A stretch of 64,000 nucleotides of DNA from Macrostomum lignano (GCA_002269645.1 NIVC01004022.1:79-64078); one strand, 5' to 3'. Positions 7,946-64,000 are shown, counted from the stretch's first letter. Translations and numbers: made by a program. The notes: a model not told the origin generated them from the letters alone.

Positions 7946-10900
7946 TACTTTAGTGTACTTCGGCAGGAACCATTGTGAGTACGAAGCTGAAAACTGAGAT
8001 CTGGAAGGAAACATTATCAATCTAGAAGCCTGCAAGACGCCAACGCTCCATCTGTTCCCTACTCGAACTTACAGACTCCCAAGTCCCCCCTGCTCAGTAC
8101 ATTAATATGCAGAAAGTACTTTAGTGTACTTCGACAGGAACCATTGTGAGTACGAAGCTGAAAACTGAGATCTGGAAGGAAACATTATCAATCTAGAAGC
8201 CTACAAGACGCCAAGGCTCCATCTGTTCCCTACTCGAACTTACAGACTCCCAAGTCCCCCCTGCTCAGTACACTCAGCTGCAGAAAGTACTTTGGTGTAC
8301 TTCGGCAGGAACCATTGTGAGTACGAAGCTGAAAACTGAGATCTGGAAGGAAACATTATCAATCTAGAAGCCTACAAGACGCCAAGGCTCCATCTGTTCC
8401 CTACTCGAACTTACAGACTCCCAAGTCGCCCCTGCTCGGTACAATAATATGCAGAAAGTACTTTAGTGTACTTCGACAGGAACCATTGTGAGTACGAAGC
8501 TGAAAACTGAGATCTGGAAGGAAACATTATCAATCTAGAAGCCTACAAGACGCCAAGGCTCCATCTGTTCCCTACTCGAACTTACAGACTCCCAAGTCCC
8601 CCCTGCTCAGTACACTCAGCTGCAGAAAGTACTTTGGTGTACTTCGGCAGGAACCATTGTAAATACGAAGCTGAAAACTGAGATCTGGAAGGAAACATTA
8701 TCAATCTAGAAGCCTGAGAGACGCCAAGGCTCCATCTGTTCCCTACTCGAACTTACAGACTCCCAAGTCCCCCCTGCTCAGTACACTCAGCTGCAGAAAG
8801 TACTTTAGTGTACTTCGACAGGAACCATTGTAGTACGAAGCTGAAAACTGAGATCTGGAAGGAAACATTATCAATCTAGAAGCCTGAGAGACGCCAAGGC
8901 TCCATCTGTTCCCTACTCGAACTTACAGACTCCCAAGTCCCCCTGCTCAGTACATTAATATGCAGAAAGTACTTTAGTGTACTTCGACAGGAACCATTGT
9001 GAGTACGAAGCTGAAAACTGAGATCTGGAAGGAAACATTATCAATCTAGAAGCCTGCAAGACGCCAAGGCTCCATCTGTTCCCTACTCGAACTTACAGAC
9101 TCCCAAGTCCCCCCTGCTCGGTACAATAATATGCAGAAAGTACTTTAGTGTACTTCGACAGGAACCATTGTGAGTACGAAGCTGAAAACTGAGATCTGGA
9201 AGGAAACATTATCAATCTAGAAGCCTGAGAGACGCCAAGGCTCCATCTGTTCCCTACTCGAACTTACAGACTCCCAAGTCCCCCCGCTCAGTACATTAAT
9301 ATGCAGAAAGTACTTTAGTGTACTTCGCAGGAACCATTGTGAGTACGAAGCTGAAAACTGAGATCTGGAAGGAAACATTATCAATCTAGAAGCCTACAAG
9401 ACGCCAAGGCTCCATCTGTTCCCTACTCGAACTTACAGACTCCCAAGTCCCCCCTGCTCAGTACATTAATATGCAGAAAGTACTTTAGTGTACTTCGACA
9501 GGAACCATTGTGAGTACGAAGCTGAAAACTGAGATCTGGAAGGAAACATTATCAATCTAGAAGCCTACAAGACGCCAAGGCTCCATCTGTTCCCTACTCG
9601 AACTTACAGACTCCCAAGTCCCCCCTGCTCAGTACACTCAGCTGCAGAAAGTACTTTAGTGTACTTCGACAGGAACCATTGTGAGTACGAAGCTGAAAAC
9701 TGAGATCTGGAAGGAAACATTATCAATCTAGAAGCCTACAAGACGCCAAGGCTCCATCTGTTCCCTACTCGAACTTACAGACTCCCAAGTCCCCCTGCTC
9801 AGTACATTAATATGCAGAAAGTACTTTAGTGTACTTCGACAGGAACCATTGTGAGTACGAAGCTGAAAACTGAGATCTGGAAGGAAACATTATCAATCTA
9901 GAAGCCTACAAGACGCCAAGGCTCCATCTGTTCCCTACTCGAACTTACAGACTCCCAAGTCCCCCTGCTCAGTACATCAGCTGCAGAAAGTACTTTAGTG
10001 TACTTCGACAGGAACCATTGTGAGTACGAAGCTGAAAACTGAGATCTGGAAGGAAACATTATCAATCTAGAAGCCTACAAGACGCCAAGGCTCCATCTGT
10101 TCCCTACTCGAACTTACAGACTCCCAAGTCCCCCCTGCTCAGTACATCAGCTGCAGAAAGTACTTTAGTGTACTTCGACAGGAACCATTGTGAGTACGAA
10201 GCTGAAAACTGAGATCTGGAAGGAAACATTATCAATCTAGAAGCCTACAAGACGCCAAGGCTCCATCTGTTCCCTACTCGAACTTACAGACTCCCAAGTC
10301 CCCCCGCTCAGTACATTAATATGCAGAAAGTACTTTAGTGTACTTCGACAGGAACCATTGTGAGTACGAAGCTGAAAACTGAGATCTGGAAGGAAACATT
10401 ATCAATCTAGAAGCCTACAAGACGCCAAGGCTCCATCTGTTCCCTACTCGAACTTACAGACTCCCAAGTCCCCCCTGCTCAGTACATTAATATGCAGAAA
10501 GTACTTTAGTGTACTTCGACAGGAACCATTGTGAGTACGAAGCTGAAAACTGAGATCTGGAAGGAAACATTATCAATCTAGAAGCCTACAAGACGCCAAG
10601 GCTCCATCTGTTCCCTACTCGAACTTACAGACTCCCAAGTCCCCCCTGCTCAGTACATCAATGCAGAAAGTACTTTAGTGTACTTCGACAGGAACCATTG
10701 TGAGTACGAAGCTGAAAACTGAGATCTGGAAGGAAACATTATCAATCTAGAAGCCTACAAGACGCCAAGGCTCCATCTGTTCCCTACTCGAACTTACAGA
10801 CTCCCAAGTCCCCCTGCTCAGTACATTAATATGCAGAAAGTACTTTAGTGTACTTCGACAGGAACCATTGTGAGTACGAAGCTGAAAACTGAGATCTGGA

Positions 10901-13900
10901 AGGAAACATTATCAATCTAGAAGCCTACAAGACGCCAAGGCTCCATCTGTTCCCTACTCGAACTTACAGACTCCCAAGTCCCCCTGCTCAGTACATCAGC
11001 TGCAGAAAGTACTTTAGTGTACTTCGACAGGAACCATTGTGAGTACGAAGCTGAAAACTGAGATCTGGAAGGAAACATTATCAATCTAGAAGCCTACAAG
11101 ACGCCAAGGCTCCATCTGTTCCCTACTCGAACTTACAGACTCCCAAGTCCCCCTGCTCAGTACATTAATGCAGAAAGTACTTTAGTGTACTTCGACAGGA
11201 ACCATTGTGAGTACGAAGCTGAAAACTGAGATCTGGAAGGAAACATTATCAATCTAGAAGCCTACAAGACGCCAAGGCTCCATCTGTTCCCTACTCGAAC
11301 TTACAGACTCCCAAGTCCCCCCTGCTCAGTACATTAATATGCAGAAAGTACTTTAGTGTACTTCGACAGGAACCATTGTGAGTACGAAGCTGAAAACTGA
11401 GATCTGGAAGGAAACATTATCAATCTAGAAGCCTACAAGACGCCAAGGCTCCATCTGTTCCCTACTCGAACTTACAGACTCCCAAGTCCCCCCTGCTCAG
11501 TACATTAATATGCAGAAAGTACTTTAGTGTACTTCGACAGGAACCATTGTGAGTACGAAGCTGAAAACTGAGATCTGGAAGGAAACATTATCAATCTAGA
11601 AGCCTACAAGACGCCAAGGCTCCATCTGTTCCCTACTCGAACTTACAGACTCCCAAGTCCCCCCTGCTCAGTACATTAATATGCAGAAAGTACTTTAGTG
11701 TACTTCGACAGGAACCATTGTGAGTACGAAGCTGAAAACTGAGATCTGGAAGGAAACATTATCAATCTAGAAGCCTACAAGACGCCAAGGCTCCATCTGT
11801 TCCCTACTCGAACTTACAGACTCCCAAGTCCCCCTGCTCAGTACATTAATATGCAGAAAGTACTTTAGTGTACTTCGACAGGAACCATTGTGAGTACGAA
11901 GCTGAAAACTGAGATCTGGAAGGAAACATTATCAATCTAGAAGCCTACAAGACGCCAAGGCTCCATCTGTTCCCTACTCGAACTTACAGACTCCCAAGTC
12001 CCCCCTGCTCAGTACATTAATATGCAGAAAGTACTTTAGTGTACTTCGACAGGAACCATTGTGAGTACGAAGCTGAAAACTGAGATCTGGAAGGAAACAT
12101 TATCAATCTAGAAGCCTACAAGACGCCAAGGCTCCATCTGTTCCCTACTCGAACTTACAGACTCCCAAGTCCCCCCTGCTCAGTACATTAATATGCAGAA
12201 AGTACTTTAGTGTACTTCGACAGGAACCATTGTGAGTACGAAGCTGAAAACTGAGATCTGGAAGGAAACATTATCAATCTAGAAGCCTACAAGACGCCAA
12301 GGCTCCATCTGTTCCCTACTCGAACTTACAGACTCCCAAGTCCCCCCTGCTCAGTACATTAATATGCAGAAAGTACTTTAGTGTACTTCGACAGGAACCA
12401 TTGTGAGTACGAAGCTGAAAACTGAGATCTGGAAGGAAACATTATCAATCTAGAAGCCTACAAGACGCCAAGGCTCCATCTGTTCCCTACTCGAACTTAC
12501 AGACTCCCAAGTCCCCCTGCTCAGTACATTAATGCAGAAAGTACTTTAGTGTACTTCGACAGGAACCATTGTGAGTACGAAGCTGAAAACTGAGATCTGG
12601 AAGGAAACATTATCAATCTAGAAGCCTACAAGACGCCAAGGCTCCATCTGTTCCCTACTCGAACTTACAGACTCCCAAGTCCCCCTGCTCAGTACATTAA
12701 TATGCAGAAAGTACTTTAGTGTACTTCGACAGGAACCATTGTGAGTACGAAGCTGAAAACTGAGATCTGGAAGGAAACATTATCAATCTAGAAGCCTACA
12801 AGACGCCAAGGCTCCATCTGTTCCCTACTCGAACTTACAGACTCCCAAGTCCCCCCTGCTCAGTACATTAATATGCAGAAAGTACTTTAGTGTACTTCGA
12901 CAGGAACCATTGTGAGTACGAAGCTGAAAACTGAGATCTGGAAGGAAACATTATCAATCTAGAAGCCTACAAGACGCCAAGGCTCCATCTGTTCCCTACT
13001 CGAACTTACAGACTCCCAAGTCCCCCCTGCTCAGTACATTAATATGCAGAAAGTACTTTAGTGTACTTCGACAGGAACCATTGTGAGTACGAAGCTGAAA
13101 ACTGAGATCTGGAAGGAAACATTATCAATCTAGAAGCCTACAAGACGCCAAGGCTCCATCTGTTCCCTACTCGAACTTACAGACTCCCAAGTCCCCCTGC
13201 TCAGTACATTAATATGCAGAAAGTACTTTAGTGTACTTCGACAGGAACCATTGTGAGTACGAAGCTGAAAACTGAGATCTGGAAGGAAACATTATCAATC
13301 TAGAAGCCTACAAGACGCCAAGGCTCCATCTGTTCCCTACTCGAACTTACAGACTCCCAAGTCCCCCTGCTCAGTACATTAATATGCAGAAAGTACTTTA
13401 GTGTACTTCGACAGGAACCATTGTGAGTACGAAGCTGAAAACTGAGATCTGGAAGGAAACATTATCAATCTAGAAGCCTACAAGACGCCAAGGCTCCATC
13501 TGTTCCCTACTCGAACTTACAGACTCCCAAGTCCCCCCTGCTCAGTACATTAATATGCAGAAAGTACTTTAGTGTACTTCGACAGGAACCATTGTGAGTA
13601 CGAAGCTGAAAACTGAGATCTGGAAGGAAACATTATCAATCTAGAAGCCTACAAGACGCCAAGGCTCCATCTGTTCCCTACTCGAACTTACAGACTCCCA
13701 AGTCCCCCTGCTCAGTACATTAATATGCAGAAAGTACTTTAGTGTACTTCGACAGGAACCATTGTGAGTACGAAGCTGAAAACTGAGATCTGGAAGGAAA
13801 CATTATCAATCTAGAAGCCTACAAGACGCCAAGGCTCCATCTGTTCCCTACTCGAACTTACAGACTCCCAAGTCCCCCCTGCTCAGTACATTAATATGCA

Positions 13901-16900
13901 GAAAGTACTTTAGTGTACTTCGACAGGAACCATTGTGAGTACGAAGCTGAAAACTGAGATCTGGAAGGAAACATTATCAATCTAGAAGCCTACAAGACGC
14001 CAAGGCTCCATCTGTTCCCTACTCGAACTTACAGACTCCCAAGTCCCCCCTGCTCAGTACATTAATATGCAGAAAGTACTTTAGTGTACTTCGACAGAAC
14101 CATTGTGAGTACGAAGCTGAAAACTGAGATCTGGAAGGAAACATTATCAATCTAGAAGCCTACAAGACGCCAAGGCTCCATCTGTTCCCTACTCGAACTT
14201 ACAGACTCCCAAGTCCCCCCTGCTCAGTACATTAATATGCAGAAAGTACTTTAGTGTACTTCGACAGAACCATTGTGAGTACGAAGCTGAAAACTGAGAT
14301 CTGGAAGGAAACATTATCAATCTAGAAGCCTACAAGACGCCAAGGCTCCATCTGTTCCCTACTCGAACTTACAGACTCCCAAGTCCCCCCTGCTCAGTAC
14401 ATTAATATGCAGAAAGTACTTTAGTGTACTTCGACAGAACCATTGTGAGTACGAAGCTGAAAACTGAGATCTGGAAGGAAACATTATCAATCTAGAAGCC
14501 TACAAGACGCCAAGGCTCCATCTGTTCCCTACTCGAACTTACAGACTCCCAAGTCCCCCCTGCTCAGTACATTAATGCAGAAAGTACTTTAGTGTACTTC
14601 GACAGGAACCATTGTGAGTACGAAGCTGAAAACTGAGATCTGGAAGGAAACATTATCAATCTAGAAGCCTACAAGACGCCAAGGCTCCATCTGTTCCCTA
14701 CTCGAACTTACAGACTCCCAAGTCCCCCCTGCTCAGTACATTAATATGCAGAAAGTACTTTAGTGTACTTCGACAGAACCATTGTGAGTACGAAGCTGAA
14801 AACTGAGATCTGGAAGGAAACATTATCAATCTAGAAGCCTACAAGACGCCAAGGCTCCATCTGTTCCCTACTCGAACTTACAGACTCCCAAGTCCCCCCT
14901 GCTCAGTACATTAATATGCAGAAAGTACTTTAGTGTACTTCGACAGAACCATTGTGAGTACGAAGCTGAAAACTGAGATCTGGAAGGAAACATTATCAAT
15001 CTAGAAGCCTACAAGACGCCAAGGCTCCATCTGTTCCCTACTCGAACTTACAGACTCCCAAGTCCCCCCTGCTCAGTACATTAATATGCAGAAAGTACTT
15101 TAGTGTACTTCGACAGAACCATTGTGAGTACGAAGCTGAAAACTGAGATCTGGAAGGAAACATTATCAATCTAGAAGCCTACAAGACGCCAAGGCTCCAT
15201 CTGTTCCCTACTCGAACTTACAGACTCCCAAGTCCCCCCTGCTCAGTACATTAATATGCAGAAAGTACTTTAGTGTACTTCGACAGAACCATTGTGAGTA
15301 CGAAGCTGAAAACTGAGATCTGGAAGGAAACATTATCAATCTAGAAGCCTACAAGACGCCAAGGCTCCATCTGTTCCCTACTCGAACTTACAGACTCCCA
15401 AGTCCCCCCTGCTCAGTACATTAATATGCAGAAAGTACTTTAGTGTACTTCGACAGAACCATTGTGAGTACGAAGCTGAAAACTGAGATCTGGAAGGAAA
15501 CATTATCAATCTAGAAGCCTACAAGACGCCAAGGCTCCATCTGTTCCCTACTCGAACTTACAGACTCCCAAGTCCCCCCTGCTCAGTACATTAATATGCA
15601 GAAAGTACTTTAGTGTACTTCGACAGAACCATTGTGAGTACGAAGCTGAAAACTGAGATCTGGAAGGAAACATTATCAATCTAGAAGCCTACAAGACGCC
15701 AAGGCTCCATCTGTTCCCTACTCGAACTTACAGACTCCCAAGTCCCCCCTGCTCAGTACATTAATATGCAGAAAGTACTTTAGTGTACTTCGACAGAACC
15801 ATTGTGAGTACGAAGCTGAAAACTGAGATCTGGAAGGAAACATTATCAATCTAGAAGCCTACAAGACGCCAAGGCTCCATCTGTTCCCTACTCGAACTTA
15901 CAGACTCCCAAGTCCCCCCTGCTCAGTACATTAATATGCAGAAAGTACTTTAGTGTACTTCGACAGAACCATTGTGAGTACGAAGCTGAAAACTGAGATC
16001 TGGAAGGAAACATTATCAATCTAGAAGCCTACAAGACGCCAAGGCTCCATCTGTTCCCTACTCGAACTTACAGACTCCCAAGTCCCCCTGCTCAGTACAT
16101 TAATATGCAGAAAGTACTTTAGTGTACTTCGACAGAACCATTGTGAGTACGAAGCTGAAAACTGAGATCTGGAAGGAAACATTATCAATCTAGAAGCCTA
16201 CAAGACGCCAAGGCTCCATCTGTTCCCTACTCGAACTTACAGACTCCCAAGTCCCCCTGCTCAGTACATTAATATGCAGAAAGTACTTTAGTGTACTTCG
16301 ACAGAACCATTGTGAGTACGAAGCTGAAAACTGAGATCTGGAAGGAAACATTATCAATCTAGAAGCCTACAAGACGCCAAGGCTCCATCTGTTCCCTACT
16401 CGAACTTACAGACTCCCAAGTCCCCCCTGCTCAGTACATTAATATGCAGAAAGTACTTTAGTGTACTTCGACAGAACCATTGTGAGTACGAAGCTGAAAA
16501 CTGAGATCTGGAAGGAAACATTATCAATCTAGAAGCCTACAAGACGCCAAGGCTCCATCTGTTCCCTACTCGAACTTACAGACTCCCAAGTCCCCCCTGC
16601 TCAGTACATTAATATGCAGAAAGTACTTTAGTGTACTTCGACAGAACCATTGTGAGTACGAAGCTGAAAACTGAGATCTGGAAGGAAACATTATCAATCT
16701 AGAAGCCTACAAGACGCCAAGGCTCCATCTGTTCCCTACTCGAACTTACAGACTCCCAAGTCCCCCCTGCTCAGTACATTAATATGCAGAAAGTACTTTA
16801 GTGTACTTCGACAGAACCATTGTGAGTACGAAGCTGAAAACTGAGATCTGGAAGGAAACATTATCAATCTAGAAGCCTACAAGACGCCAAGGCTCCATCT

Positions 16901-19900
16901 GTTCCCTACTCGAACTTACAGACTCCCAAGTCCCCCCTGCTCAGTACATTAATATGCAGAAAGTACTTTAGTGTACTTCGACAGAACCATTGTGAGTACG
17001 AAGCTGAAAACTGAGATCTGGAAGGAAACATTATCAATCTAGAAGCCTACAAGACGCCAAGGCTCCATCTGTTCCCTACTCGAACTTACAGACTCCCAAG
17101 TCCCCCCTGCTCAGTACATTAATATGCAGAAAGTACTTTAGTGTACTTCGACAGAACCATTGTGAGTACGAAGCTGAAAACTGAGATCTGGAAGGAAACA
17201 TTATCAATCTAGAAGCCTACAAGACGCCAAGGCTCCATCTGTTCCCTACTCGAACTTACAGACTCCCAAGTCCCCCCTGCTCAGTACATTAATATGCAGA
17301 AAGTACTTTAGTGTACTTCGACAGAACCATTGTGAGTACGAAGCTGAAAACTGAGATCTGGAAGGAAACATTATCAATCTAGAAGCCTACAAGACGCCAA
17401 GGCTCCATCTGTTCCCTACTCGAACTTACAGACTCCCAAGTCCCCCCTGCTCAGTACATTAATATGCAGAAAGTACTTTAGTGTACTTCGACAGAACCAT
17501 TGTGAGTACGAAGCTGAAAACTGAGATCTGGAAGGAAACATTATCAATCTAGAAGCCTACAAGACGCCAAGGCTCCATCTGTTCCCTACTCGAACTTACA
17601 GACTCCCAAGTCCCCCTGCTCAGTACATTAATATGCAGAAAGTACTTTAGTGTACTTCGACAGAACCATTGTGAGTACGAAGCTGAAAACTGAGATCTGG
17701 AAGGAAACATTATCAATCTAGAAGCCTACAAGACGCCAAGGCTCCATCTGTTCCCTACTCGAACTTACAGACTCCCAAGTCCCCCCTGCTCAGTACATTA
17801 ATATGCAGAAAGTACTTTAGTGTACTTCGACAGAACCATTGTGAGTACGAAGCTGAAAACTGAGATCTGGAAGGAAACATTATCAATCTAGAAGCCTACA
17901 AGACGCCAAGGCTCCATCTGTTCCCTACTCGAACTTACAGACTCCCAAGTCCCCCCTGCTCAGTACATTAATATGCAGAAAGTACTTTAGTGTACTTCGA
18001 CAGAACCATTGTGAGTACGAAGCTGAAAACTGAGATCTGGAAGGAAACATTATCAATCTAGAAGCCTACAAGACGCCAAGGCTCCATCTGTTCCCTACTC
18101 GAACTTACAGACTCCCAAGTCCCCCCTGCTCAGTACATTAATATGCAGAAAGTACTTTAGTGTACTTCGACAGAACCATTGTGAGTACGAAGCTGAAAAC
18201 TGAGATCTGGAAGGAAACATTATCAATCTAGAAGCCTACAAGACGCCAAGGCTCCATCTGTTCCCTACTCGAACTTACAGACTCCCAAGTCCCCCCTGCT
18301 CAGTACATTAATATGCAGAAAGTACTTTAGTGTACTTCGACAGAACCATTGTGAGTACGAAGCTGAAAACTGAGATCTGGAAGGAAACATTATCAATCTA
18401 GAAGCCTACAAGACGCCAAGGCTCCATCTGTTCCCTACTCGAACTTACAGACTCCCAAGTCCCCCCTGCTCAGTACATTAATATGCAGAAAGTACTTTAG
18501 TGTACTTCGACAGAACCATTGTGAGTACGAAGCTGAAAACTGAGATCTGGAAGGAAACATTATCAATCTAGAAGCCTACAAGACGCCAAGGCTCCATCTG
18601 TTCCCTACTCGAACTTACAGACTCCCAAGTCCCCCCTGCTCAGTACATTAATATGCAGAAAGTACTTTAGTGTACTTCGACAGAACCATTGTGAGTACGA
18701 AGCTGAAAACTGAGATCTGGAAGGAAACATTATCAATCTAGAAGCCTACAAGACGCCAAGGCTCCATCTGTTCCCTACTCGAACTTACAGACTCCCAAGT
18801 CCCCCCTGCTCAGTACATTAATATGCAGAAAGTACTTTAGTGTACTTCGACAGAACCATTGTGAGTACGAAGCTGAAAACTGAGATCTGGAAGGAAACAT
18901 TATCAATCTAGAAGCCTACAAGACGCCAAGGCTCCATCTGTTCCCTACTCGAACTTACAGACTCCCAAGTCCCCCCTGCTCAGTACATTAATATGCAGAA
19001 AGTACTTTAGTGTACTTCGACAGAACCATTGTGAGTACGAAGCTGAAAACTGAGATCTGGAAGGAAACATTATCAATCTAGAAGCCTACAAGACGCCAAG
19101 GCTCCATCTGTTCCCTACTCGAACTTACAGACTCCCAAGTCCCCCCTGCTCAGTACATTAATATGCAGAAAGTACTTTAGTGTACTTCGACAGAACCATT
19201 GTGAGTACGAAGCTGAAAACTGAGATCTGGAAGGAAACATTATCAATCTAGAAGCCTACAAGACGCCAAGGCTCCATCTGTTCCCTACTCGAACTTACAG
19301 ACTCCCAAGTCCCCCCTGCTCAGTACATTAATATGCAGAAAGTACTTTAGTGTACTTCGACAGAACCATTGTGAGTACGAAGCTGAAAACTGAGATCTGG
19401 AAGGAAACATTATCAATCTAGAAGCCTACAAGACGCCAAGGCTCCATCTGTTCCCTACTCGAACTTACAGACTCCCAAGTCCCCCCTGCTCAGTACATTA
19501 ATATGCAGAAAGTACTTTAGTGTACTTCGACAGAACCATTGTGAGTACGAAGCTGAAAACTGAGATCTGGAAGGAAACATTATCAATCTAGAAGCCTACA
19601 AGACGCCAAGGCTCCATCTGTTCCCTACTCGAACTTACAGACTCCCAAGTCCCCCCTGCTCAGTACATTAATATGCAGAAAGTACTTTAGTGTACTTCGA
19701 CAGAACCATTGTGAGTACGAAGCTGAAAACTGAGATCTGGAAGGAAACATTATCAATCTAGAAGCCTACAAGACGCCAAGGCTCCATCTGTTCCCTACTC
19801 GAACTTACAGACTCCCAAGTCCCCCCTGCTCAGTACATTAATATGCAGAAAGTACTTTAGTGTACTTCGACAGAACCATTGTGAGTACGAAGCTGAAAAC

Positions 19901-38135: not shown

Positions 38136-38139
38136 GGTT

Positions 38140-55100: not shown

Positions 55101-58100
55101 TTCCTTCCAGATCTCAGTTTTCAGCTTCGTACTCACAATGGTTCTGTCGAAGTACACTAAAGTACTTTCTGCATATTAATGTACTGAGCAGGGGGGACTT
55201 GGGAGTCTGTAAGTTCGAGTAGGGAACAGATGGAGCCTTGGCGTCTTGTAGGCTTCTAGATTGATAATGTTTCCTTCCAGATCTCAGTTTTCAGCTTCGT
55301 ACTCACAATGGTTCTTGTCGAAGTACACTAAAGTACTTTCTGCATATTAATGTACTGAGCAGGGGGGACTTGGGAGTCTGTAAGTTCGAGTAGGGAACAG
55401 ATGGAGCCTTGGCGTCTTGTAGGCTTCTAGATTGATAATGTTTCCTTCCAGATCTCAGTTTTCAGCTTCGTACTCACAATGGTTCTGTCGAAGTACACTA
55501 AAGTACTTTCTGCATATTAATGTACTGAGCAGGGGGGACTTGGGAGTCTGTAAGTTCGAGTAGGGAACAGATGGAGCCTTGGCGTCTTGTAGGCTTCTAG
55601 ATTGATAATGTTTCCTTCCAGATCTCAGTTTTCAGCTTCGTACTCACAATGGTTCTGTCGAAGTACACTAAAGTACTTTCTGCATATTAATGTACTGAGC
55701 AGGGGGGACTTGGGAGTCTGTAAGTTCGAGTAGGGAACAGATGGAGCCTTGGCGTCTTGTAGGCTTCTAGATTGATAATGTTTCCTTCCAGATCTCAGTT
55801 TTCAGCTTCGTACTCACAATGGTTCTGTCGAAGTACACTAAAGTACTTTCTGCATATTAATGTACTGAGCAGGGGGACTTGGGAGTCTGTAAGTTCGAGT
55901 AGGGAACAGATGGAGCCTTGGCGTCTTGTAGGCTTCTAGATTGATAATGTTTCCTTCCAGATCTCAGTTTTCAGCTTCGTACTCACAATGGTTCTGTCGA
56001 AGTACACTAAAGTACTTTCTGCATATTAATGTACTGAGCAGGGGGGACTTGGGAGTCTGTAAGTTCGAGTAGGGAACAGATGGAGCCTTGGCGTCTTGTA
56101 GGCTTCTAGATTGATAATGTTTCCTTCCAGATCTCAGTTTTCAGCTTCGTACTCACAATGGTTCTGTCGAAGTACACTAAAGTACTTTCTGCATATTAAT
56201 GTACTGAGCAGGGGGGACTTGGGAGTCTGTAAGTTCGAGTAGGGAACAGATGGAGCCTTGGCGTCTTGTAGGCTTCTAGATTGATAATGTTTCCTTCCAG
56301 ATCTCAGTTTTCAGCTTCGTACTCACAATGGTTCTGTCGAAGTACACTAAAGTACTTTCTGCATATTAATGTACTGAGCAGGGGGGACTTGGGAGTCTGT
56401 AAGTTCGAGTAGGGAACAGATGGAGCCTTGGCGTCTTGTAGGCTTCTAGATTGATAATGTTTCCTTCCAGATCTCAGTTTTCAGCTTCGTACTCACAATG
56501 GTTCTGTCGAAGTACACTAAAGTACTTTCTGCATATTAATGTACTGAGCAGGGGGGACTTGGGAGTCTGTAAGTTCGAGTAGGGAACAGATGGAGCCTTG
56601 GCGTCTTGTAGGCTTCTAGATTGATAATGTTTCCTTCCAGATCTCAGTTTTCAGCTTCGTACTCACAATGGTTCTTGTCGAAGTACACTAAAGTACTTTC
56701 TGCATATTAATGTACTGAGCAGGGGGGACTTGGGAGTCTGTAAGTTCGAGTAGGGAACAGATGGAGCCTTGGCGTCTTGTAGGCTTCTAGATTGATAATG
56801 TTTCCTTCCAGATCTCAGTTTTCAGCTTCGTACTCACAATGGTTCTGTCGAAGTACACTAAAGTACTTTCTGCATATTAATGTACTGAGCAGGGGGACTT
56901 GGGAGTCTGTAAGTTCGAGTAGGGAACAGATGGAGCCTTGGCGTCTTGTAGGCTTCTAGATTGATAATGTTTCCTTCCAGATCTCAGTTTTCAGCTTCGT
57001 ACTCACAATGGTTCTTCGAAGTACACTAAAGTACTTTCTGCATATTAATGTACTGAGCAGGGGGGACTTGGGAGTCTGTAAGTTCGAGTAGGGAACAGAT
57101 GGAGCCTTGGCGTCTTGTAGGCTTCTAGATTGATAATGTTTCCTTCCAGATCTCAGTTTTCAGCTTCGTACTCACAATGGTTCTGTCGAAGTACACTAAA
57201 GTACTTTCTGCATATTAATGTACTGAGCAGGGGGGACTTGGGAGTCTGTAAGTTCGAGTAGGGAACAGATGGAGCCTTGGCGTCTTGTAGGCTTCTAGAT
57301 TGATAATGTTTCCTTCCAGATCTCAGTTTTCAGCTTCGTACTCACAATGGTTCTTGTCGAAGTACACTAAAGTACTTTCTGCATATTAATGTACTGAGCA
57401 GGGGGGACTTGGGAGTCTGTAAGTTCGAGTAGGGAACAGATGGAGCCTTGGCGTCTTGTAGGCTTCTAGATTGATAATGTTTCCTTCCAGATCTCAGTTT
57501 TCAGCTTCGTACTCACAATGGTTCTGTCGAAGTACACTAAAGTACTTTCTGCATATTAATGTACTGAGCAGGGGGGACTTGGGAGTCTGTAAGTTCGAGT
57601 AGGGAACAGATGGAGCCTTGGCGTCTTGTAGGCTTCTAGATTGATAATGTTTCCTTCCAGATCTCAGTTTTCAGCTTCGTACTCACAATGGTTCTTGTCG
57701 AAGTACACTAAAGTACTTTCTGCATATTAATGTACTGAGCAGGGGGGACTTGGGAGTCTGTAAGTTCGAGTAGGGAACAGATGGAGCCTTGGCGTCTTGT
57801 AGGCTTCTAGATTGATAATGTTTCCTTCCAGATCTCAGTTTTCAGCTTCGTACTCACAATGGTTCTTGTCGAAGTACACTAAAGTACTTTCTGCATATTA
57901 ATGTACTGAGCAGGGGGGACTTGGGAGTCTGTAAGTTCGAGTAGGGAACAGATGGAGCCTTGGCGTCTTGTAGGCTTCTAGATTGATAATGTTTCCTTCC
58001 AGATCTCAGTTTTCAGCTTCGTACTCACAATGGTTCTGTCGAAGTACACTAAAGTACTTTCTGCATATTAATGTACTGAGCAGGGGGGACTTGGGAGTCT

Positions 58101-61100
58101 GTAAGTTCGAGTAGGGAACAGATGGAGCCTTGGCGTCTTGTAGGCTTCTAGATTGATAATGTTTCCTTCCAGATCTCAGTTTTCAGCTTCGTACTCACAA
58201 TGGTTCTGTCGAAGTACACTAAAGTACTTTCTGCATATTAATGTACTGAGCAGGGGGGACTTGGGAGTCTGTAAGTTCGAGTAGGGAACAGATGGAGCCT
58301 TGGCGTCTTGTAGGCTTCTAGATTGATAATGTTTCCTTCCAGATCTCAGTTTTCAGCTTCGTACTCACAATGGTTCTGTCGAAGTACACTAAAGTACTTT
58401 CTGCATATTAATGTACTGAGCAGGGGGGACTTGGGAGTCTGTAAGTTCGAGTAGGGAACAGATGGAGCCTTGGCGTCTTGTAGGCTTCTAGATTGATAAT
58501 GTTTCCTTCCAGATCTCAGTTTTCAGCTTCGTACTCACAATGGTTCTGTCGAAGTACACTAAAGTACTTTCTGCATATTAATGTACTGAGCAGGGGGGAC
58601 TTGGGAGTCTGTAAGTTCGAGTAGGGAACAGATGGAGCCTTGGCGTCTTGTAGGCTTCTAGATTGATAATGTTTCCTTCCAGATCTCAGTTTTCAGCTTC
58701 GTACTCACAATGGTTCTGTCGAAGTACACTAAAGTACTTTCTGCATATTAATGTACTGAGCAGGGGGGACTTGGGAGTCTGTAAGTTCGAGTAGGGAACA
58801 GATGGAGCCTTGGCGTCTTGTAGGCTTCTAGATTGATAATGTTTCCTTCCAGATCTCAGTTTTCAGCTTCGTACTCACAATGGTTCTGTCGAAGTACACT
58901 AAAGTACTTTCTGCATATTAATGTACTGAGCAGGGGGGACTTGGGAGTCTGTAAGTTCGAGTAGGGAACAGATGGAGCCTTGGCGTCTTGTAGGCTTCTA
59001 GATTGATAATGTTTCCTTCCAGATCTCAGTTTTCAGCTTCGTACTCACAATGGTTCTGTCGAAGTACACTAAAGTACTTTCTGCATATTAATGTACTGAG
59101 CAGGGGGGACTTGGGAGTCTGTAAGTTCGAGTAGGGAACAGATGGAGCCTTGGCGTCTTGTAGGCTTCTAGATTGATAATGTTTCCTTCCAGATCTCAGT
59201 TTTCAGCTTCGTACTCACAATGGTTCTGTCGAAGTACACTAAAGTACTTTCTGCATATTAATGTACTGAGCAGGGGGACTTGGGAGTCTGTAAGTTCGAG
59301 TAGGGAACAGATGGAGCCTTGGCGTCTTGTAGGCTTCTAGATTGATAATGTTTCCTTCCAGATCTCAGTTTTCAGCTTCGTACTCACAATGGTTCTGTCG
59401 AAGTACACTAAAGTACTTTCTGCATATTAATGTACTGAGCAGGGGGGACTTGGGAGTCTGTAAGTTCGAGTAGGGAACAGATGGAGCCTTGGCGTCTTGT
59501 AGGCTTCTAGATTGATAATGTTTCCTTCCAGATCTCAGTTTTCAGCTTCGTACTCACAATGGTTCTGTCGAAGTACACTAAAGTACTTTCTGCATATTAA
59601 TGTACTGAGCAGGGGGACTTGGGAGTCTGTAAGTTCGAGTAGGGAACAGATGGAGCCTTGGCGTCTTGTAGGCTTCTAGATTGATAATGTTTCCTTCCAG
59701 ATCTCAGTTTTCAGCTTCGTACTCACAATGGTTCTGTCGAAGTACACTAAAGTACTTTCTGCATATGTACTGAGCAGGGGGGACTTGGGAGTCTGTAAGT
59801 TCGAGTAGGGAACAGATGGAGCCTTGGCGTCTTGTAGGCTTCTAGATTGATAATGTTTCCTTCCAGATCTCAGTTTTCAGCTTCGTACTCACAATGGTTC
59901 CTGTCGAAGTACACTAAAGTACTTTCTGCATATGTACTGAGCAGGGGGGACTTGGGAGTCTGTAAGTTCGAGTAGGGAACAGATGGAGCCTTGGCGTCTT
60001 GTAGGCTTCTAGATTGATAATGTTTCCTTCCAGATCTCAGTTTTCAGCTTCGTACTCACAATGGTTCTTGTCGAAGTACACTAAAGTACTTTCTGCATAT
60101 TAATGTACTGAGCAGGGGGGACTTGGGAGTCTGTAAGTTCGAGTAGGGAACAGATGGAGCCTTGGCGTCTTGTAGGCTTCTAGATTGATAATGTTTCCTT
60201 CCAGATCTCAGTTTTCAGCTTCGTACTCACAATGGTTCTTGTCGAAGTACACTAAAGTACTTTCTGCATATTAATGTACTGAGCAGGGGGACTTGGGAGT
60301 CTGTAAGTTCGAGTAGGGAACAGATGGAGCCTTGGCGTCTTGTAGGCTTCTAGATTGATAATGTTTCCTTCCAGATCTCAGTTTTCAGCTTCGTACTCAC
60401 AATGGTTCTGTCGAAGTACACTAAAGTACTTTCTGCATATTAATGTACTGAGCAGGGGGGACTTGGGAGTCTGTAAGTTCGAGTAGGGAACAGATGGAGC
60501 CTTGGCGTCTTGTAGGCTTCTAGATTGATAATGTTTCCTTCCAGATCTCAGTTTTCAGCTTCGTACTCACAATGGTTCTTGTCGAAGTACACTAAAGTAC
60601 TTTCTGCATATTAATGTACTGAGCAGGGGGACTTGGGAGTCTGTAAGTTCGAGTAGGGAACAGATGGAGCCTTGGCGTCTTGTAGGCTTCTAGATTGATA
60701 ATGTTTCCTTCCAGATCTCAGTTTTCAGCTTCGTACTCACAATGGTTCTGTCGAAGTACACTAAAGTACTTTCTGCATATTAATGTACTGAGCAGGGGGG
60801 ACTTGGGAGTCTGTAAGTTCGAGTAGGGAACAGATGGAGCCTTGGCGTCTTGTAGGCTTCTAGATTGATAATGTTTCCTTCCAGATCTCAGTTTTCAGCT
60901 TCGTACTCACAATGGTTCCTGTCGAAGTACACTAAAGTACTTTCTGCATATTAATGTACTGAGCAGGGGGGACTTGGGAGTCTGTAAGTTCGAGTAGGGA
61001 ACAGATGGAGCCTTGGCGTCTTGTAGGCTTCTAGATTGATAATGTTTCCTTCCAGATCTCAGTTTTCAGCTTCGTACTCACAATGGTTCTGTCGAAGTAC

Positions 61101-64000
61101 ACTAAAGTACTTTCTGCATATTAATGTACTGAGCAGGGGGGACTTGGGAGTCTGTAAGTTCGAGTAGGGAACAGATGGAGCCTTGGCGTCTTGTAGGCTT
61201 CTAGATTGATAATGTTTCCTTCCAGATCTCAGTTTTCAGCTTCGTACTCACAATGGTTCCTGTCGAAGTACACTAAAGTACTTTCTGCATATGTACTGAG
61301 CAGGGGGGACTTGGGAGTCTGTAAGTTCGAGTAGGGAACAGATGGAGCCTTGGCGTCTTGTAGGCTTCTAGATTGATAATGTTTCCTTCCAGATCTCAGT
61401 TTTCAGCTTCGTACTCACAATGGTTCTGTCGAAGTACACTAAAGTACTTTCTGCATATGTACTGAGCAGGGGGGACTTGGGAGTCTGTAAGTTCGAGTAG
61501 GGAACAGATGGAGCCTTGGCGTCTTGTAGGCTTCTAGATTGATAATGTTTCCTTCCAGATCTCAGTTTTCAGCTTCGTACTCACAATGGTTCCTGTCGAA
61601 GTACACTAAAGTACTTTCTGCATATTAATGTACTGAGCAGGGGGGACTTGGGAGTCTGTAAGTTCGAGTAGGGAACAGATGGAGCCTTGGCGTCTTGTAG
61701 GCTTCTAGATTGATAATGTTTCCTTCCAGATCTCAGTTTTCAGCTTCGTACTCACAATGGTTCTTGTCGAAGTACACTAAAGTACTTTCTGCATATTAAT
61801 GTACTGAGCAGGGGGACTTGGGAGTCTGTAAGTTCGAGTAGGGAACAGATGGAGCCTTGGCGTCTTGTAGGCTTCTAGATTGATAATGTTTCCTTCCAGA
61901 TCTCAGTTTTCAGCTTCGTACTCACAATGGTTCTGTCGAAGTACACTAAAGTACTTTCTGCATATTAATGTACTGAGCAGGGGGGACTTGGGAGTCTGTA
62001 AGTTCGAGTAGGGAACAGATGGAGCCTTGGCGTCTTGTAGGCTTCTAGATTGATAATGTTTCCTTCCAGATCTCAGTTTTCAGCTTCGTACTCACAATGG
62101 TTCTTGTCGAAGTACACTAAAGTACTTTCTGCATATGTACTGAGCAGGGGGGACTTGGGAGTCTGTAAGTTCGAGTAGGGAACAGATGGAGCCTTGGCGT
62201 CTTGTAGGCTTCTAGATTGATAATGTTTCCTTCCAGATCTCAGTTTTCAGCTTCGTACTCACAATGGTTCTGTCGAAGTACACTAAAGTACTTTCTGCAT
62301 ATTAATGTACTGAGCAGGGGGACTTGGGAGTCTGTAAGTTCGAGTAGGGAACAGATGGAGCCTTGGCGTCTTGTAGGCTTCTAGATTGATAATGTTTCCT
62401 TCCAGATCTCAGTTTTCAGCTTCGTACTCACAATGGTTCTTGTCGAAGTACACTAAAGTACTTTCTGCATATTAATGTACTGAGCAGGGGGACTTGGGAG
62501 TCTGTAAGTTCGAGTAGGGAACAGATGGAGCCTTGGCGTCTTGTAGGCTTCTAGATTGATAATGTTTCCTTCCAGATCTCAGTTTTCAGCTTCGTACTCA
62601 CAATGGTTCTTGTCGAAGTACACTAAAGTACTTTCTGCATATTAATGTACTGAGCAGGGGGGACTTGGGAGTCTGTAAGTTCGAGTAGGGAACAGATGGA
62701 GCCTTGGCGTCTTGTAGGCTTCTAGATTGATAATGTTTCCTTCCAGATCTCAGTTTTCAGCTTCGTACTCACAATGGTTCTTGCGAAGTACACTAAAGTA
62801 CTTTCTGCATATTAATGTACTGAGCAGGGGGGACTTGGGAGTCTGTAAGTTCGAGTAGGGAACAGATGGAGCCTTGGCGTCTTGTAGGCTTCTAGATTGA
62901 TAATGTTTCCTTCCAGATCTCAGTTTTCAGCTTCGTACTCACAATGGTTCTGCGAAGTACACTAAAGTACTTTCTGCATATTAATGTACTGAGCAGGGGG
63001 GACTTGGGAGTCTGTAAGTTCGAGTAGGGAACAGATGGAGCCTTGGCGTCTTGTAGGCTTCTAGATTGATAATGTTTCCTTCCAGATCTCAGTTTTCAGC
63101 TTCGTACTCACAATGGTTCTTGTCGAAGTACACTAAAGTACTTTCTGCATGAGTTGTACTGAGCAGGGGGACTTGGGAGTCTGTAAGTTCGAGTAGGGAA
63201 CAGATGGAGCCTTGGCGTCTTGTAGGCTTCTAGATTGATAATGTTTCCTTCCAGATCTCAGTTTTCAGCTTCGTACTCACAATGGTTCTGCGAAGTACAC
63301 TAAAGTACTTTCTGCATATTAATGTACTGAGCAGGGGGACTTGGGAGTCTGTAAGTTCGAGTAGGGAACAGATGGAGCCTTGGCGTCTTGTAGGCTTCTA
63401 GATTGATAATGTTTCCTTCCAGATCTCAGTTTTCAGCTTCGTACTCACAATGGTTCTTGTCGAAGTACACTAAAGTACTTTCTGCATATTAATGTACTGA
63501 GCAGGGGGGACTTGGGAGTCTGTAAGTTCGAGTAGGGAACAGATGGAGCCTTGGCGTCTTGTAGGCTTCTAGATTGATAATGTTTCCTTCCAGATCTCAG
63601 TTTTCAGCTTCGTACTCACAATGGTTCTGTCGAAGTACACTAAAGTACTTTCTGCATATTAATGTACTGAGCAGGGGGGACTTGGGAGTCTGTAAGTTCG
63701 AGTAGGGAACAGATGGAGCCTTGGCGTCTTGTAGGCTTCTAGATTGATAATGTTTCCTTCCAGATCTCAGTTTTCAGCTTCGTACTCACAATGGTTCTTG
63801 TCGAAGTACACTAAAGTACTTTCTGCATATTAATGTACTGAGCAGGGGGGACTTGGGAGTCTGTAAGTTCGAGTAGGGAACAGATGGAGCCTTGGCGTCT
63901 TGTAGGCTTCTAGATTGATAATGTTTCCTTCCAGATCTCAGTTTTCAGCTTCGTACTCACAATGGTTCCTGCGAAGTACACTAAAGTACTTTCTGCATAT
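40194..64000 (-). repeat. Satellite array 2: same monomer as array 1 in reverse orientation, at least about 140 copies, truncated by the window
   Basis: Reverse complement of the array 1 monomer throughout. It begins abruptly at aaagtacttt (40194). Confidence 0.98.

What the first reader, a model, noticed from the sequence alone, without database searches (positions are those of the whole stretch)
7946..64000. Candidate giant Foldback (FB-NOF-like) transposon whose inverted arms are satellite arrays over 20 kb long
Seen: two arrays of one 170-171 bp monomer in opposite orientation, of similar length (21.9 kb and at least 23.8 kb), enclose a cassette with a NOF-type Mutator transposase. Known: Drosophila FB-NOF and complex-TIR Phantom/Mutator elements have inverted arms built of tandem repeats around this transposase family, but those arms are far shorter. 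Inference: this is an element of at least 56 kb whose terminal-repeat modules have expanded to satellite scale, so a transposon could be seeding or moving satellite blocks. Monomer variation rises again after about 59700, suggesting the right outer end is close.
Basis: partly seen in the sequence, partly recalled or inferred. Interest (0 to 1): 0.88.

Follow-up and report, generated by a model that had tools for sequence, protein, structure and literature searches.

The report
Transposase flanked by inverted satellite arrays
Two blocks of a 170-bp satellite, each over 20 kb and pointing in opposite directions, flank a nearly intact Mutator-like transposase gene; this most likely is an overgrown foldback transposon of a kind already described in flour beetles, which shows how a transposon can breed satellite DNA, but nothing here proves it still moves.

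Summary
Array 1 (7942-29891, 129 monomers) and array 2 (40194-64000+, 140 monomers, inverted) are built from one 170/171-bp monomer. They enclose a 10.3-kb cassette.

The cassette holds a transposase gene of about 930 codons, broken by one frameshift. It has a WRKY-like zinc finger, a DDE core with a CxxH motif, an Ulp1 protease domain and a PHD finger. It also holds a 3.6-kb GC-rich minisatellite and a nested retroelement remnant.

The transposase resembles the Mutator superfamily. It fits the PHD-bearing Rehavkus group better than NOF/Phantom, because no FLYWCH or MULE Pfam hit was found.

Published work on Tribolium already describes Rehavkus foldback elements whose inverted ends are ~164-bp satellite arrays, some longer than 11 kb.

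Distant relatives of this transposase carry 175-186-bp tandem arrays just 3' of the gene. One is a true TIR/TSD element, and its array varies from 2.4 to 16 copies between paralogues.

So a link between transposon and satellite is likely. Mobility of the 56-kb unit is not shown. The right end lies outside the window, the variant layering of the arms is not mirrored, and no second copy could be searched.

Verdict: partly supported; a new, very large member of a known kind.

The parts
6430..7941 (.). AT-rich (about 34% GC) unique flank left of array 1. It is a candidate site for an outer terminal domain, TIR and TSD. This is untested.
   Evidence: Composition; sequence read. It shares no 12-mer or longer, direct or inverted, with the non-repeat parts of the cassette compared (29892-30720, 34340-34420, 37200-40193). 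The monomer profile finds no relic here.
7942..29891 (+). Array 1: 129 monomers of 170/171 bp, a whole number of units in the phase AAAGTACTTT...GCAG. Layering from the outer side: a diverged edge of about 10 monomers, then a zone of the ancestral 'B' type (GACAGGAACC, to about monomer 40), then a homogeneous core of the derived 'A' type (GACAGAACC, about 80 monomers), then a diverged B-type inner edge of about 10 monomers.
   Evidence: junctions read
29892..30373 (.). Unique spacer between array 1 and the first ORF. No similarity to anything else in the window.
30374..34347 (+). An ORF with a hydrophobic, signal-peptide-like start (30374-30715) runs into a GC-rich minisatellite. The minisatellite has 24-bp units (GGTGCTGCTGGTGTTGCTTTGAGA, 30716 to about 33600) and then 15-bp units (33675-34347). 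Whether it codes for anything is doubtful; Rehavkus-group elements are described as carrying a minisatellite.
   Evidence: no Pfam hit; PMC6446971
34414..35688 (+). Transposase, N-terminal part (424 codons). It has a WRKY-like zinc-finger fold and an RNase-H-like DDE core: DATGG at 35134, TDFSW at 35371, CTNH (the CxxH motif) at 35500.
   Evidence: 947 relatives; AF2 mean pLDDT 86.9
35685..37199 (+). Transposase, C-terminal part, in another reading frame. A single frameshift lies between 35661 and 35685. This part carries the catalytic-E motif YVESYF (36030), an Ulp1/C48 protease domain (His about 36666, Cys in GYNCG at 36867) and a C-terminal PHD finger (37044-37196).
   Evidence: Pfam; tblastn of full-length relatives P0002 and P0152 across both ORFs; frame analysis; motif coordinates
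37200..37992 (.). AT-rich 3' spacer with short local repeats.
37993..40051 (-). Nested retroelement remnant: a reverse-transcriptase fragment (38002-38400) and a gag-like ORF (38928-39800). It is bounded by 75-bp direct repeats (37993-38067 and 39976-40051, 82% identical). With it removed, array 2 would start about 0.95 kb after the transposase stop codon.
   Evidence: (RVT_1, 30.1 bits)
40052..40193 (.). Short unique spacer before array 2.
40194..64000 (-). Array 2: 140 monomers in inverted orientation, running off the window. Layering from the cassette outward: a diverged edge of about 8 monomers, then a B-type zone (to about monomer 46), then an A-type core mixed with the 'C' type (GACAAGAACC), then from about 59766 a mixed zone (A, B, C, F and the A21-loss variants).

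Best explanation
The locus is a foldback-type DNA transposon, or the relic of one, from a Mutator-related, PHD-finger-bearing (Rehavkus-like) family.

The proposed mechanism is as follows; the steps are inferred unless marked as shown.
1. The ancestral element carried a short run of ~170-bp repeats just inside its end(s), as its relatives do. (Shown for relatives.)
2. Those repeats would carry binding sites for the transposase's WRKY-like DNA-binding domain.
3. Unequal exchange or replication slippage expanded the repeats from inside the arrays. The oldest monomer variants were left at the array edges and a young variant came to fill the cores. (The edge-versus-core layering is shown.)
4. Exchange between the two inverted arms, or with other arrays of the same satellite, spread the same young variant into both cores.
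5. Each arm is now at least 22 kb. The transposase has a frameshift and a retroelement has inserted next to it. This copy is therefore probably an immobile, satellite-generating relic rather than an active 56-kb transposon.
For: 1. Two arrays of one monomer in opposite orientation flank the transposase. All monomer 3' ends face the cassette, and the top variant is the identical 170-mer in both arrays.

2. Simple insertion of a transposon into a uniform array is excluded. The flanking arrays are inverted, not co-oriented and phase-continuous.

3. All three visible array ends lie at the same monomer phase, at or next to the palindrome AAAGTACTTT. Array 1 is a whole number of units. All ends show graded divergence, as native array ends do and random breakpoints do not.

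4. The cassette contains no other TIR/TSD pair for the transposase. The longest inverted match that spans the cassette is the satellite itself; the only longer one (30 nt, 36100-36129 / 37694-37723) has one arm inside the gene and so cannot be its TIR.

5. The transposase belongs to a large family (947 relatives at E<=1e-3). The family shares conserved motifs (consensus DATGS / TDFSWA / CxxH / TNxxVENWF), a WRKY-like N-terminal fold, frequent PHD fingers and sometimes Ulp1.

6. Relatives carry nucleosome-sized tandem arrays directly 3' of the gene.
- L010/L013: 186 bp x 15-16, starting 570 bp after the stop codon.
- Paralogue L014: the same array x 2.4.
- L001: about 175 bp x 3.
- In L010 the element is bounded by a 13-14-bp TIR and an 8-bp (or 6-bp) target duplication. 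Its 3' end is confirmed independently by where the paralogues stop aligning, and the array sits 205 bp inside that end.

7. Literature. Rehavkus elements have a PHD finger and a minisatellite and are the sister group of MULEs (PMC6446971). In Tribolium they are 'foldback DNA transposons' with TIRs plus subterminal tandem repeats (164-bp unit). Their inverted termini can exceed 11 kb, and termini-born repeats have expanded to arrays of 80.5 kb (PMC12581902, PMC10218199).

8. Three rare monomer states are shared only between equivalent edges: two between the inner edges and one between the outer zones.
Against: - The right end is outside the window, so no mirror terminal sequence, TIR or TSD is seen.
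- No second copy or empty site could be looked for.
- The large-scale layering is not mirrored. The B-type zone is outer in array 1 and inner in array 2.
- The mirror-like sharing of rare variants is weak: 3 of 3, chance about 0.125. Two of the three are changes that can easily recur, namely overlapping but non-identical deletions and a C-run expansion.
- No unique inverted sequence accompanies the arms at their inner ends.
- The best-characterised relative has its array on one side only, with no inverted copy in the 9.5 kb of the element upstream of the gene.
- Repeat units of relatives share no sequence with this monomer.
- Assignment to Rehavkus rests on domain content and the literature, not on sequence comparison with a named Rehavkus transposase.
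- The transposase is frameshifted.
Confidence: 0.52

Rival explanations
1. This is an ordinary satellite block, for example pericentromeric, with a change of array orientation at an island of transposon debris. On this view the transposase, the minisatellite and the retroelement accumulated between two arrays, or an inversion with one breakpoint in the array flipped one part. The satellite has no genetic link to the transposase.
For: - Orientation switches ('macro-dyad symmetries') and inversions are common in satellite arrays of Tribolium and mouse, and transposon-derived islands sit between inverted satellite arrays in cichlid centromeres (PMC12581902, PMC13652916).
- The cassette is a mosaic of at least three unrelated repeats.
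- The arm layering is not mirrored.
- The same old variants (G111, GAG, the CTCAGCTGCAG-type 3' end) sit at all edges, including both edges of array 1, as in any array that grows from the middle.
- The transposase is frameshifted.
Against: - An inversion breakpoint or an insertion inside an array should fall at a random monomer phase within homogeneous monomers. Here both inner ends lie at the native unit boundary and have graded, old-looking edges.
- No TIR or TSD of an independently inserted transposon is found.
- It would be a coincidence that a transposase family whose members carry 175-186-bp subterminal arrays 3' of the gene sits here with a 170-bp array 3' of the gene, about 0.95 kb away once the nested retroelement is discounted.
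- The two arms are of similar size.
Confidence: 0.33
2. A non-transpositional inverted duplication (palindrome formation by fold-back repair or template switching) copied one array edge in mirror image around a pre-existing unique segment. Arm-to-arm gene conversion has since kept the arms alike.
For: - Rare variants are shared only between the two inner edges, and one only between the outer zones.
- Both arrays have the same top variant.
- The array ends sit at a 10-bp palindrome.
Against: - The cassette has no palindromic unique sequence next to the arms.
- The junction hairpin is not more stable than shuffled sequence (z = -0.97).
- The mirror signal is statistically weak.
- This reading does not explain why this transposase family carries subterminal arrays elsewhere.
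Confidence: 0.08
3. Assembly artefact: a chimeric join or fold-back read artefact placed two parts of one satellite array in opposite orientation around unrelated sequence.
For: Long satellite arrays are error-prone in assembly, and no reads are available to check. The B/D and A/E variant pairs differ only by the length of a C run, which could reflect read error.
Against: Both inner junctions show progressive monomer decay over 8-10 units and end at the unit boundary. That is what old biological array ends look like; a chimeric join would be abrupt. The two arrays also have different variant content: the C and F types are almost confined to array 2.
Confidence: 0.05

Closest known systems
Rehavkus foldback transposons of Tribolium (Rehavkus-1_TC with TCsat23/TfSat15; TfSat06 elements of T. 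freemani; TfSat25/TCsat12)
   Same: - A Mutator-related transposase with a PHD finger.
- A minisatellite in the element.
- Inverted termini made of tandem repeats of about 164-170 bp.
- Termini that can reach more than 11 kb.
- Termini-born repeats that expand into satellite arrays (up to 80.5 kb).
Sources: PMC12581902, PMC10218199, PMC6446971.
   Different: - The arms here are at least 22-24 kb, about twice the longest reported.
- The minisatellite lies 5' of the gene, not before the 3' TIR.
- The protein also carries an Ulp1 protease domain.
- The named relatives are from a sea cucumber and a mussel, with others from marine metagenomes, not from insects or annelids.
- Outer TIRs and the 9-bp TSD are unseen.
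- No sequence comparison with a Repbase Rehavkus was possible.
Tetris (Drosophila virilis foldback element) and its TIR-220 satellite
   Same: The terminal inverted repeats contain ~220-bp tandem repeats that were amplified inside the element into kb-scale satellite-like arrays. The authors propose that over-expansion disables transposition (PMC4079207).
   Different: Tetris is non-autonomous, and no transposase is known for it. Its arrays reach 66 copies. It has an outermost terminal domain that shares 37 bp with the repeat; here the flank outside array 1 shows no similarity to the monomer.
FB-NOF of Drosophila melanogaster; Phantom elements; Tm1 of root-knot nematodes
   Same: A Mutator-superfamily transposase lies inside composite inverted arms built of tandem repeats, and the N-terminal DNA-binding domain has a WRKY/FLYWCH-type fold (PMC3169594).
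   Different: Phantom/Tm1 transposases are recognised by Pfam FLYWCH (PF04500) and MULE (PF10551), are about 400-500 aa long and have no PHD or Ulp1 domain. The window protein hits neither model and is about 930 aa with Ulp1 and PHD. FB arm repeats are tens of bp and the arms are kb-scale (my own knowledge).
Galileo (P-superfamily foldback-like element of Drosophila)
   Same: Long, internally repetitive TIRs. Their repeats carry extra transposase-binding sites, which gives a mechanistic model for why such repeats are kept (PMC3688188, PMC3573991).
   Different: A different transposase superfamily (P element, THAP domain), and arms of about 1 kb.
Macro-dyad satellite organisation and 'centroid' elements of centromeres (Tribolium freemani; haplochromine cichlids)
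   Same: Multi-kb satellite sub-arrays in inverted orientation; in cichlids, transposon-derived sequence sits next to the arrays (PMC12581902, PMC13652916).
   Different: Those structures recur in nearly every centromere. They involve degraded transposase remnants (piggyBac-like in cichlids) rather than a nearly intact gene centred between the arms.

Membership tests
Foldback-type DNA transposons (structural class: FB, Tetris, Rehavkus, Galileo-like) | Long inverted termini composed largely of tandem repeats | tested here: met
   129 plus-strand and 140 minus-strand monomers flank the cassette, with no orientation switches inside either array.
Foldback-type DNA transposons (structural class: FB, Tetris, Rehavkus, Galileo-like) | Matching outermost terminal sequences (TIR) at both ends, flanked by a target-site duplication | not testable with these tools
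   Array 2 runs off the window at 64000, and the source genome is in none of the searchable collections.
Foldback-type DNA transposons (structural class: FB, Tetris, Rehavkus, Galileo-like) | Several dispersed copies, or polymorphic empty sites (evidence of mobility) | not testable with these tools
   No exact copies of the window's ORFs are on record. The satellite 20-mer gave only chance hits in JGI metagenomes.
Rehavkus group (sister group of MULEs) | PHD finger in the transposase | tested here: met
   PF00628 at residues 435-479 of ORF2, E = 5e-5, 23.7 bits against a cut-off of 24 (borderline). PHD is also found in 8 of 40 relatives, best E = 3e-8.
Rehavkus group (sister group of MULEs) | Minisatellite or subterminal tandem repeats within the element's termini | tested here: met
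   A 24/15-bp minisatellite at 30716-34347 and 170-bp arrays on both sides. Relatives carry 175-186-bp subterminal arrays. One difference: the minisatellite is 5' of the gene here.
Rehavkus group (sister group of MULEs) | 9-bp target-site duplication and TIRs of 26-400 bp | tested here: inconclusive
   Not visible in the window. The relative in L010 has a 13-14-bp TIR with an 8-bp (GCAATATC) or 6-bp duplication, from one instance only.
Rehavkus group (sister group of MULEs) | Sequence similarity of the transposase to named Rehavkus transposases (Repbase) | not testable with these tools
   Repbase is not available, and none of the 20 hits looked up carried such a name.
Mutator superfamily (MULE) | MULE transposase domain (Pfam PF10551) | tested here: not met
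   No hit for the window protein at E <= 0.1. Only 2 of 40 family members hit weakly (best E = 0.034).
Mutator superfamily (MULE) | DDE core with a C/DxxH motif and an NxxxE(S/N) motif; N-terminal WRKY/FLYWCH-type zinc finger | tested here: met
   DATGG, TDFSW, CTNH and YVESYF in the window; family consensus TNxxVENWF. The AF2 model (mean pLDDT 86.9) matches WRKY domains (probability 0.91-0.92) and RNase-H-fold transposases IstA and Hermes, weakly. The motifs are shared with hAT, P and Kolobok, so this supports membership but is not exclusive to MULEs.
FB-NOF / Phantom subclass | FLYWCH (PF04500) plus MULE (PF10551) domain architecture; protein of about 400-500 aa (PMC3169594) | tested here: not met
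   Neither Pfam model hits. The repaired protein is about 930 aa with Ulp1 and PHD.
FB-NOF / Phantom subclass | Direct similarity to the NOF protein | not tested
   No NOF sequence was at hand. The best BFVD structural match is an uncharacterised Chelonus inanitus bracovirus protein, O92526 (E = 1.1e-8). Whether that is one of the viral Phantom proteins is only a recollection and was not checked.

The most novel reading that the evidence does not exclude
This may be an autonomous foldback transposon that is still mobile or was recently mobile. Its 20-kb arms would be bona fide satellite arrays, so a single transposition or aberrant-transposition event could move or seed satellite blocks of tens of kb, possibly blocks able to act as centromeres, in a marine invertebrate genome. 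The near-intact transposase would carry its own SUMO-protease and chromatin-reader (PHD) modules, which could let it act within heterochromatin.
Probability: 0.1. Interest if true: 0.8.

Novelty: new member of a known kind. Interest (0 to 1): 0.5.

Why it matters
How satellite DNA is born and how it spreads to new chromosomal sites is a long-standing question. Foldback transposons with repeat-bearing ends are one of the few concrete sources proposed (Tetris, Rehavkus).

This locus would be the largest such structure so far that still has a nearly intact transposase at its centre. It appears to lie outside insects, which would extend the Rehavkus-satellite link seen in Tribolium to other phyla.

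It also offers a clean test system. One 170-bp unit, one WRKY-like DNA-binding domain and one gene are enough to ask three things: whether the transposase binds the satellite monomer, how many repeats still allow excision, and at what arm length an element turns from transposon into satellite.

Tried and rejected
- **Simple insertion into one array.** Rejected: the flanking arrays are inverted and are not phase-continuous.
- **A discrete TIR/TSD element inside the cassette.** An exhaustive scan required at least 11 of 14 TIR matches and an 8-11-bp TSD with at most one mismatch; a blastn-short search for inverted matches was also run. Both found nothing but the satellite.
- **Relics of the monomer in the flank or cassette** (nhmmer profile). 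None found.
- **A terminal motif shared between the left flank and the cassette.** No shared 12-mer or longer.
- **Hairpin or cruciform at the monomer junction.** Not more stable than shuffled sequence (z = -0.97).
- **Mirror symmetry of the arms.** The zone order is opposite in the two arms, and only three rare states fit a mirror.
- **Finding the source genome or other copies.** Four exact-protein look-ups found nothing. The single metagenome scan with a satellite 20-mer gave five chance hits. A full-text search for monomer 20-mers found no paper.
- **Pfam, PDB-sequence and Rfam identification.** The transposase core hits no Pfam family. The PDB profile search was empty. There are no Rfam families or tRNAs in the window.
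- **Sequence similarity between the repeat units of relatives and this monomer.** None.
- **Inverted second arrays in relatives** L001, L002, L004, L010, L011 and L012. None seen in the available flanks.
- **Taxon of origin via the retroelement RT.** One uninformative hit.
- **Marquez & Pritham 2010 (Phantom).** The paper could not be opened.

Full report
**1. Observation**

Tandem Repeats Finder finds two period-170 arrays: 7942-29842 (128.7 copies, 98% matches) and 40225-64000 (139.9 copies, 98%). Their consensus units are reverse complements of each other. GC and AT skews are equal and opposite in the two blocks.

BLAST of one monomer gives 129 plus-strand copies confined to 7942-29877 and 140 minus-strand copies confined to 40204-63992. 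There is no orientation switch inside an array and no copy anywhere else. Reading the junctions refines the limits:
- Array 1 starts at 7942 with AAATTACTTT.
- Array 1 ends with a decayed monomer at about 29891.
- Array 2 starts at 40194 with the palindrome AAAGTACTTT and runs off the window.

So is the remark that variation rises after about 59700; the first minority variants reappear at about 59766.

**2. Inside the arrays**

The 269 monomers were segmented into 268 units; the decayed innermost monomer of array 2 stayed joined to its neighbour. These fall into 43 exact variants. Apart from the length of a C run, which may be read error, three types matter. They differ at one site: B (GACAGGAACC), A (GACAGAACC) and C (GACAAGAACC).
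- B is found at every array edge, together with other old states (G111, GAG, a CTCAGCTGCAG-type 3' end). It is therefore the ancestral type.
- A fills the cores of both arrays. The same exact 170-mer occurs 72 times in array 1 and 49 times in array 2.
- Reading outer to inner, array 1 is: edge, B zone (to about monomer 40), A core (about 80 monomers), B-type edge.
- Reading outer to inner, array 2 is: mixed zone, A/C core, B zone (about 47 monomers), edge.

The coarse layering is therefore not mirror-symmetric.

A few rare states are shared only between equivalent edges:
- Overlapping deletions at columns 135-141: array 1 innermost monomer and array 2 monomer 2.
- A C-run expansion: array 1 monomer 125 and array 2 monomer 3.
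- Loss of A21: array 1 monomer 9 and array 2 monomers 132-139.

This is 3 of 3 in the mirror direction, but the chance probability is about 0.125, and two of the three are changes that recur easily. I treat it as a hint only.

A firmer point concerns the array ends. Array 1 is a whole number of units, and all three visible ends lie at the same unit boundary. All three show 8-10 progressively diverged monomers. Native array ends look like this; random breakpoints inside a homogeneous array do not.

**3. The cassette (29892-40193)**

It contains, in order:
- (a) A 480-bp unique spacer.
- (b) An ORF with a hydrophobic start that runs into a 3.6-kb GC-rich minisatellite (24-bp, then 15-bp units).
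- (c) Two ORFs on the plus strand, 34414-35688 and 35742-37199.
- (d) An AT-rich spacer.
- (e) A minus-strand retroelement remnant (RVT_1 fragment at 38002-38400, gag-like ORF at 38928-39800) bounded by 75-bp direct repeats.
- (f) A 140-bp spacer.

Full-length relatives (P0002, 1010 aa; P0152, 1019 aa) align across both ORFs of (c), with a jump from one frame to another between 35661 and 35685 and no room for an intron. It is therefore one gene of about 930 codons with a single frameshift.

**4. What the gene is**

ORF2 carries an Ulp1/C48 protease domain (23.0 bits, above the cut-off of 20.7) and a C-terminal PHD finger (23.7 bits against a cut-off of 24).

ORF1 hits no Pfam family. It does have 947 relatives at E<=1e-3 among 1.84 billion representative proteins; the best is 35% identical. 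Named relatives come from the sea cucumber Holothuria leucospilota and the mussel Mytilus coruscus. Others come from a Tara metagenome scaffold (possibly coral-associated; that is my guess from the record name), and one is filed under a bacterial MAG, probably host contamination.

The family alignment shows conserved DATG(S), TDFSWA, CxxH and TNxxVENWF motifs and an N-terminal Cys/His pattern.

An AlphaFold model built with that alignment is confident (mean pLDDT 86.9). Its N-terminal domain matches WRKY DNA-binding domains (probability 0.91-0.92). Its core weakly matches RNase-H-fold transposases (IstA, Hermes). The best match among viral proteins is an uncharacterised bracovirus protein (E = 1.1e-8).

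Of 40 family members, 8 have PHD fingers and 2 give weak MULE hits (E = 0.034). None hits FLYWCH or the KDZ/Zisupton models.

A WRKY-type finger plus this motif set is the Mutator-superfamily pattern. The added PHD finger and minisatellite match the published description of the Rehavkus group, the sister group of MULEs (PMC6446971). 'NOF-type' (Phantom: FLYWCH plus MULE, about 400-500 aa; PMC3169594) is not supported by the domain test.

**5. Is the satellite tied to the transposon?**

Three lines of evidence say probably yes.

First, the cassette holds no other TIR/TSD pair for the gene. A simple insertion into a uniform array is also excluded by the inverted orientation.

Second, relatives carry nucleosome-sized tandem arrays right after the gene:
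- L001 has about 175 bp x 3.
- L010 and its allele L013 have 186 bp x 15-16, starting 570 bp after the stop codon.
- The paralogous copy L014 (94-96% identical) has the same array with only 2.4 units.
- L010 and L014 stop aligning 205 bp beyond the array, at ...GAAAATAGGACGTG. The terminal 14 nt recur inverted 9.5 kb upstream of the gene. The two ends are flanked by the direct repeat GCAATATC (8 bp, or 6 bp if the terminal C/G belongs to the TIR).

So at least one relative is a true TIR/TSD cut-and-paste element of 16.9 kb, with a subterminal, copy-number-variable 186-bp array.

In the window, array 2 sits on the same (3') side of the gene. Once the nested retroelement is discounted, it lies about 0.95 kb from the stop codon.

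Third, the literature describes exactly this combination in flour beetles:
- Rehavkus-1_TC (9.5 kb) has 5-8 copies of a 164-bp unit in its inverted termini.
- TfSat06 arrays of T. freemani form inverted termini 'sometimes >11 kb long'.
- TCsat12 grew from such termini to arrays of 80.5 kb.

These points come from PMC12581902 and PMC10218199. Tetris of D. virilis is a parallel case (PMC4079207).

**6. What argues against, or remains open**

- The right end is not in the window, so there is no mirror terminal sequence, TIR or TSD.
- The genome of origin is in none of the collections I could search. The satellite is absent from JGI metagenomes. Copy number, empty sites and the genome-wide distribution of the satellite are therefore unknown.
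- The arm layering is not mirrored.
- No unique inverted sequence accompanies the arms.
- The analysable relative is one-sided, with no inverted 186-bp unit in the 9.5 kb of the element upstream of the gene.
- Repeat units of relatives are unrelated in sequence to this monomer.
- Orientation switches at transposon-rich islands are common in satellite DNA (PMC12581902, PMC13652916). An unrelated satellite block with a transposon island therefore remains a serious rival, at about one third.
- Misassembly is unlikely, given the graded, phase-exact junctions and the different variant content of the two arrays. It cannot be excluded without reads.

**7. Mechanism proposed**

Shown:
- Inverted arrays around a near-intact Mutator-like transposase.
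- Old variants at the array edges and one young variant in both cores.
- Relatives with subterminal arrays of variable copy number.

Inferred:
- The 170-bp unit began as a subterminal repeat bound by the transposase's WRKY-like domain.
- It expanded from within by unequal exchange.
- Arm-to-arm or inter-locus exchange spread the A variant.
- With arms over 20 kb, a frameshift and a nested retroelement, this copy is now probably a satellite-generating relic rather than an active element.

**8. Verdict**

This is not a new kind of thing, because Rehavkus, Tetris and FB set the precedent. It is a new and unusually large member, apparently from outside the insects, with an Ulp1-PHD transposase. 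Interest is moderate (0.5).

Noticed in passing
window 1-5560: A second, unrelated inverted-repeat structure. The arms are about 692-1730 and 4073-5118 (72% identical over about 1.05 kb), with further matching pieces out to 27-52 / 5535-5560. They enclose about 2.4 kb that includes a GIY-YIG endonuclease-like ORF (3691-3969, minus strand, E = 5.5e-4). This may be a Penelope-like element remnant with inverted terminal repeats.
   Followed up: partly
window 3273-3491 and 6227-6429: Short segments repeated between the interior of that left-hand structure and the region just before the AT-rich flank. Two pieces are direct (88-95% identical) and one is inverted (89-94%).
   Followed up: no
window 30374-34347: An ORF with a signal-peptide-like start (MSLFIRICLLAALVLLCDG...) continues in frame into a (GAAGVALR)n repeat encoded by the 24-bp minisatellite. 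All three forward frames stay open for long stretches. It could be a captured or decayed host gene fragment, or simply non-coding minisatellite.
   Followed up: partly
window 37993-40051: A retroelement remnant on the minus strand (RT fragment with an F-IDD motif, and a gag-like ORF ending in a Cys/His-rich segment) lies between 75-bp direct repeats (37993-38067 and 39976-40051, 82% identical). It is nested between the transposase gene and array 2.
   Followed up: partly
window 36100-36129 / 37694-37723 and 35570-35592 / 36083-36105: A 30-nt inverted repeat (97% complementary) has one arm inside the transposase coding region and the other 500 bp past the stop codon. Next to it is a perfect 23-nt direct repeat within the gene. 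Unexplained.
   Followed up: no
window 7942, about 29891, 40194: All three visible array boundaries fall at the same monomer phase, at or next to the 10-bp palindrome AAAGTACTTT. In the ancestral variant the flanking 8-mers AGTACACT / AGTGTACT form a small dyad around it, but the predicted hairpin is no more stable than shuffled sequence (z = -0.97).
   Followed up: partly
window 28175-28359: One monomer (array 1, number 120), at the transition from the A core to the inner edge, carries a 21-nt internal duplication (AGTACGAAGCTGAAAACTGTG).
   Followed up: no
L010 478-17348 (JGI 3300056999), L013, L014: A 16.9-kb relative of the window's transposon has its boundaries defined here: a 13-14-bp TIR (CACGTCCTATTTTC), an 8-bp (GCAATATC) or 6-bp target duplication, a 1212-aa transposase with a C-terminal PHD finger, and a 186-bp subterminal array with 15-16 copies (2.4 in paralogue L014). 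L010 also has two insertions that its allele L013 lacks (about 7738-8403 and about 17497-17856).
   Followed up: yes
L010 4813-6192 versus L014 7264-8742: A 1.5-kb segment, 69% identical, lies upstream of the transposase gene in L010 and downstream in opposite orientation in L014. In L014 it overlaps a degenerate repeat region with periods of about 158-196 bp. It could be a second repeat family, or a diverged inverted arm of that element. Not resolved.
   Followed up: partly
P0026 (MES9880808.1): A 1067-aa member of this eukaryotic transposase family is deposited as a protein of a Sedimenticola sp. metagenome-assembled genome. This is probably host (invertebrate) contamination of the MAG.
   Followed up: no
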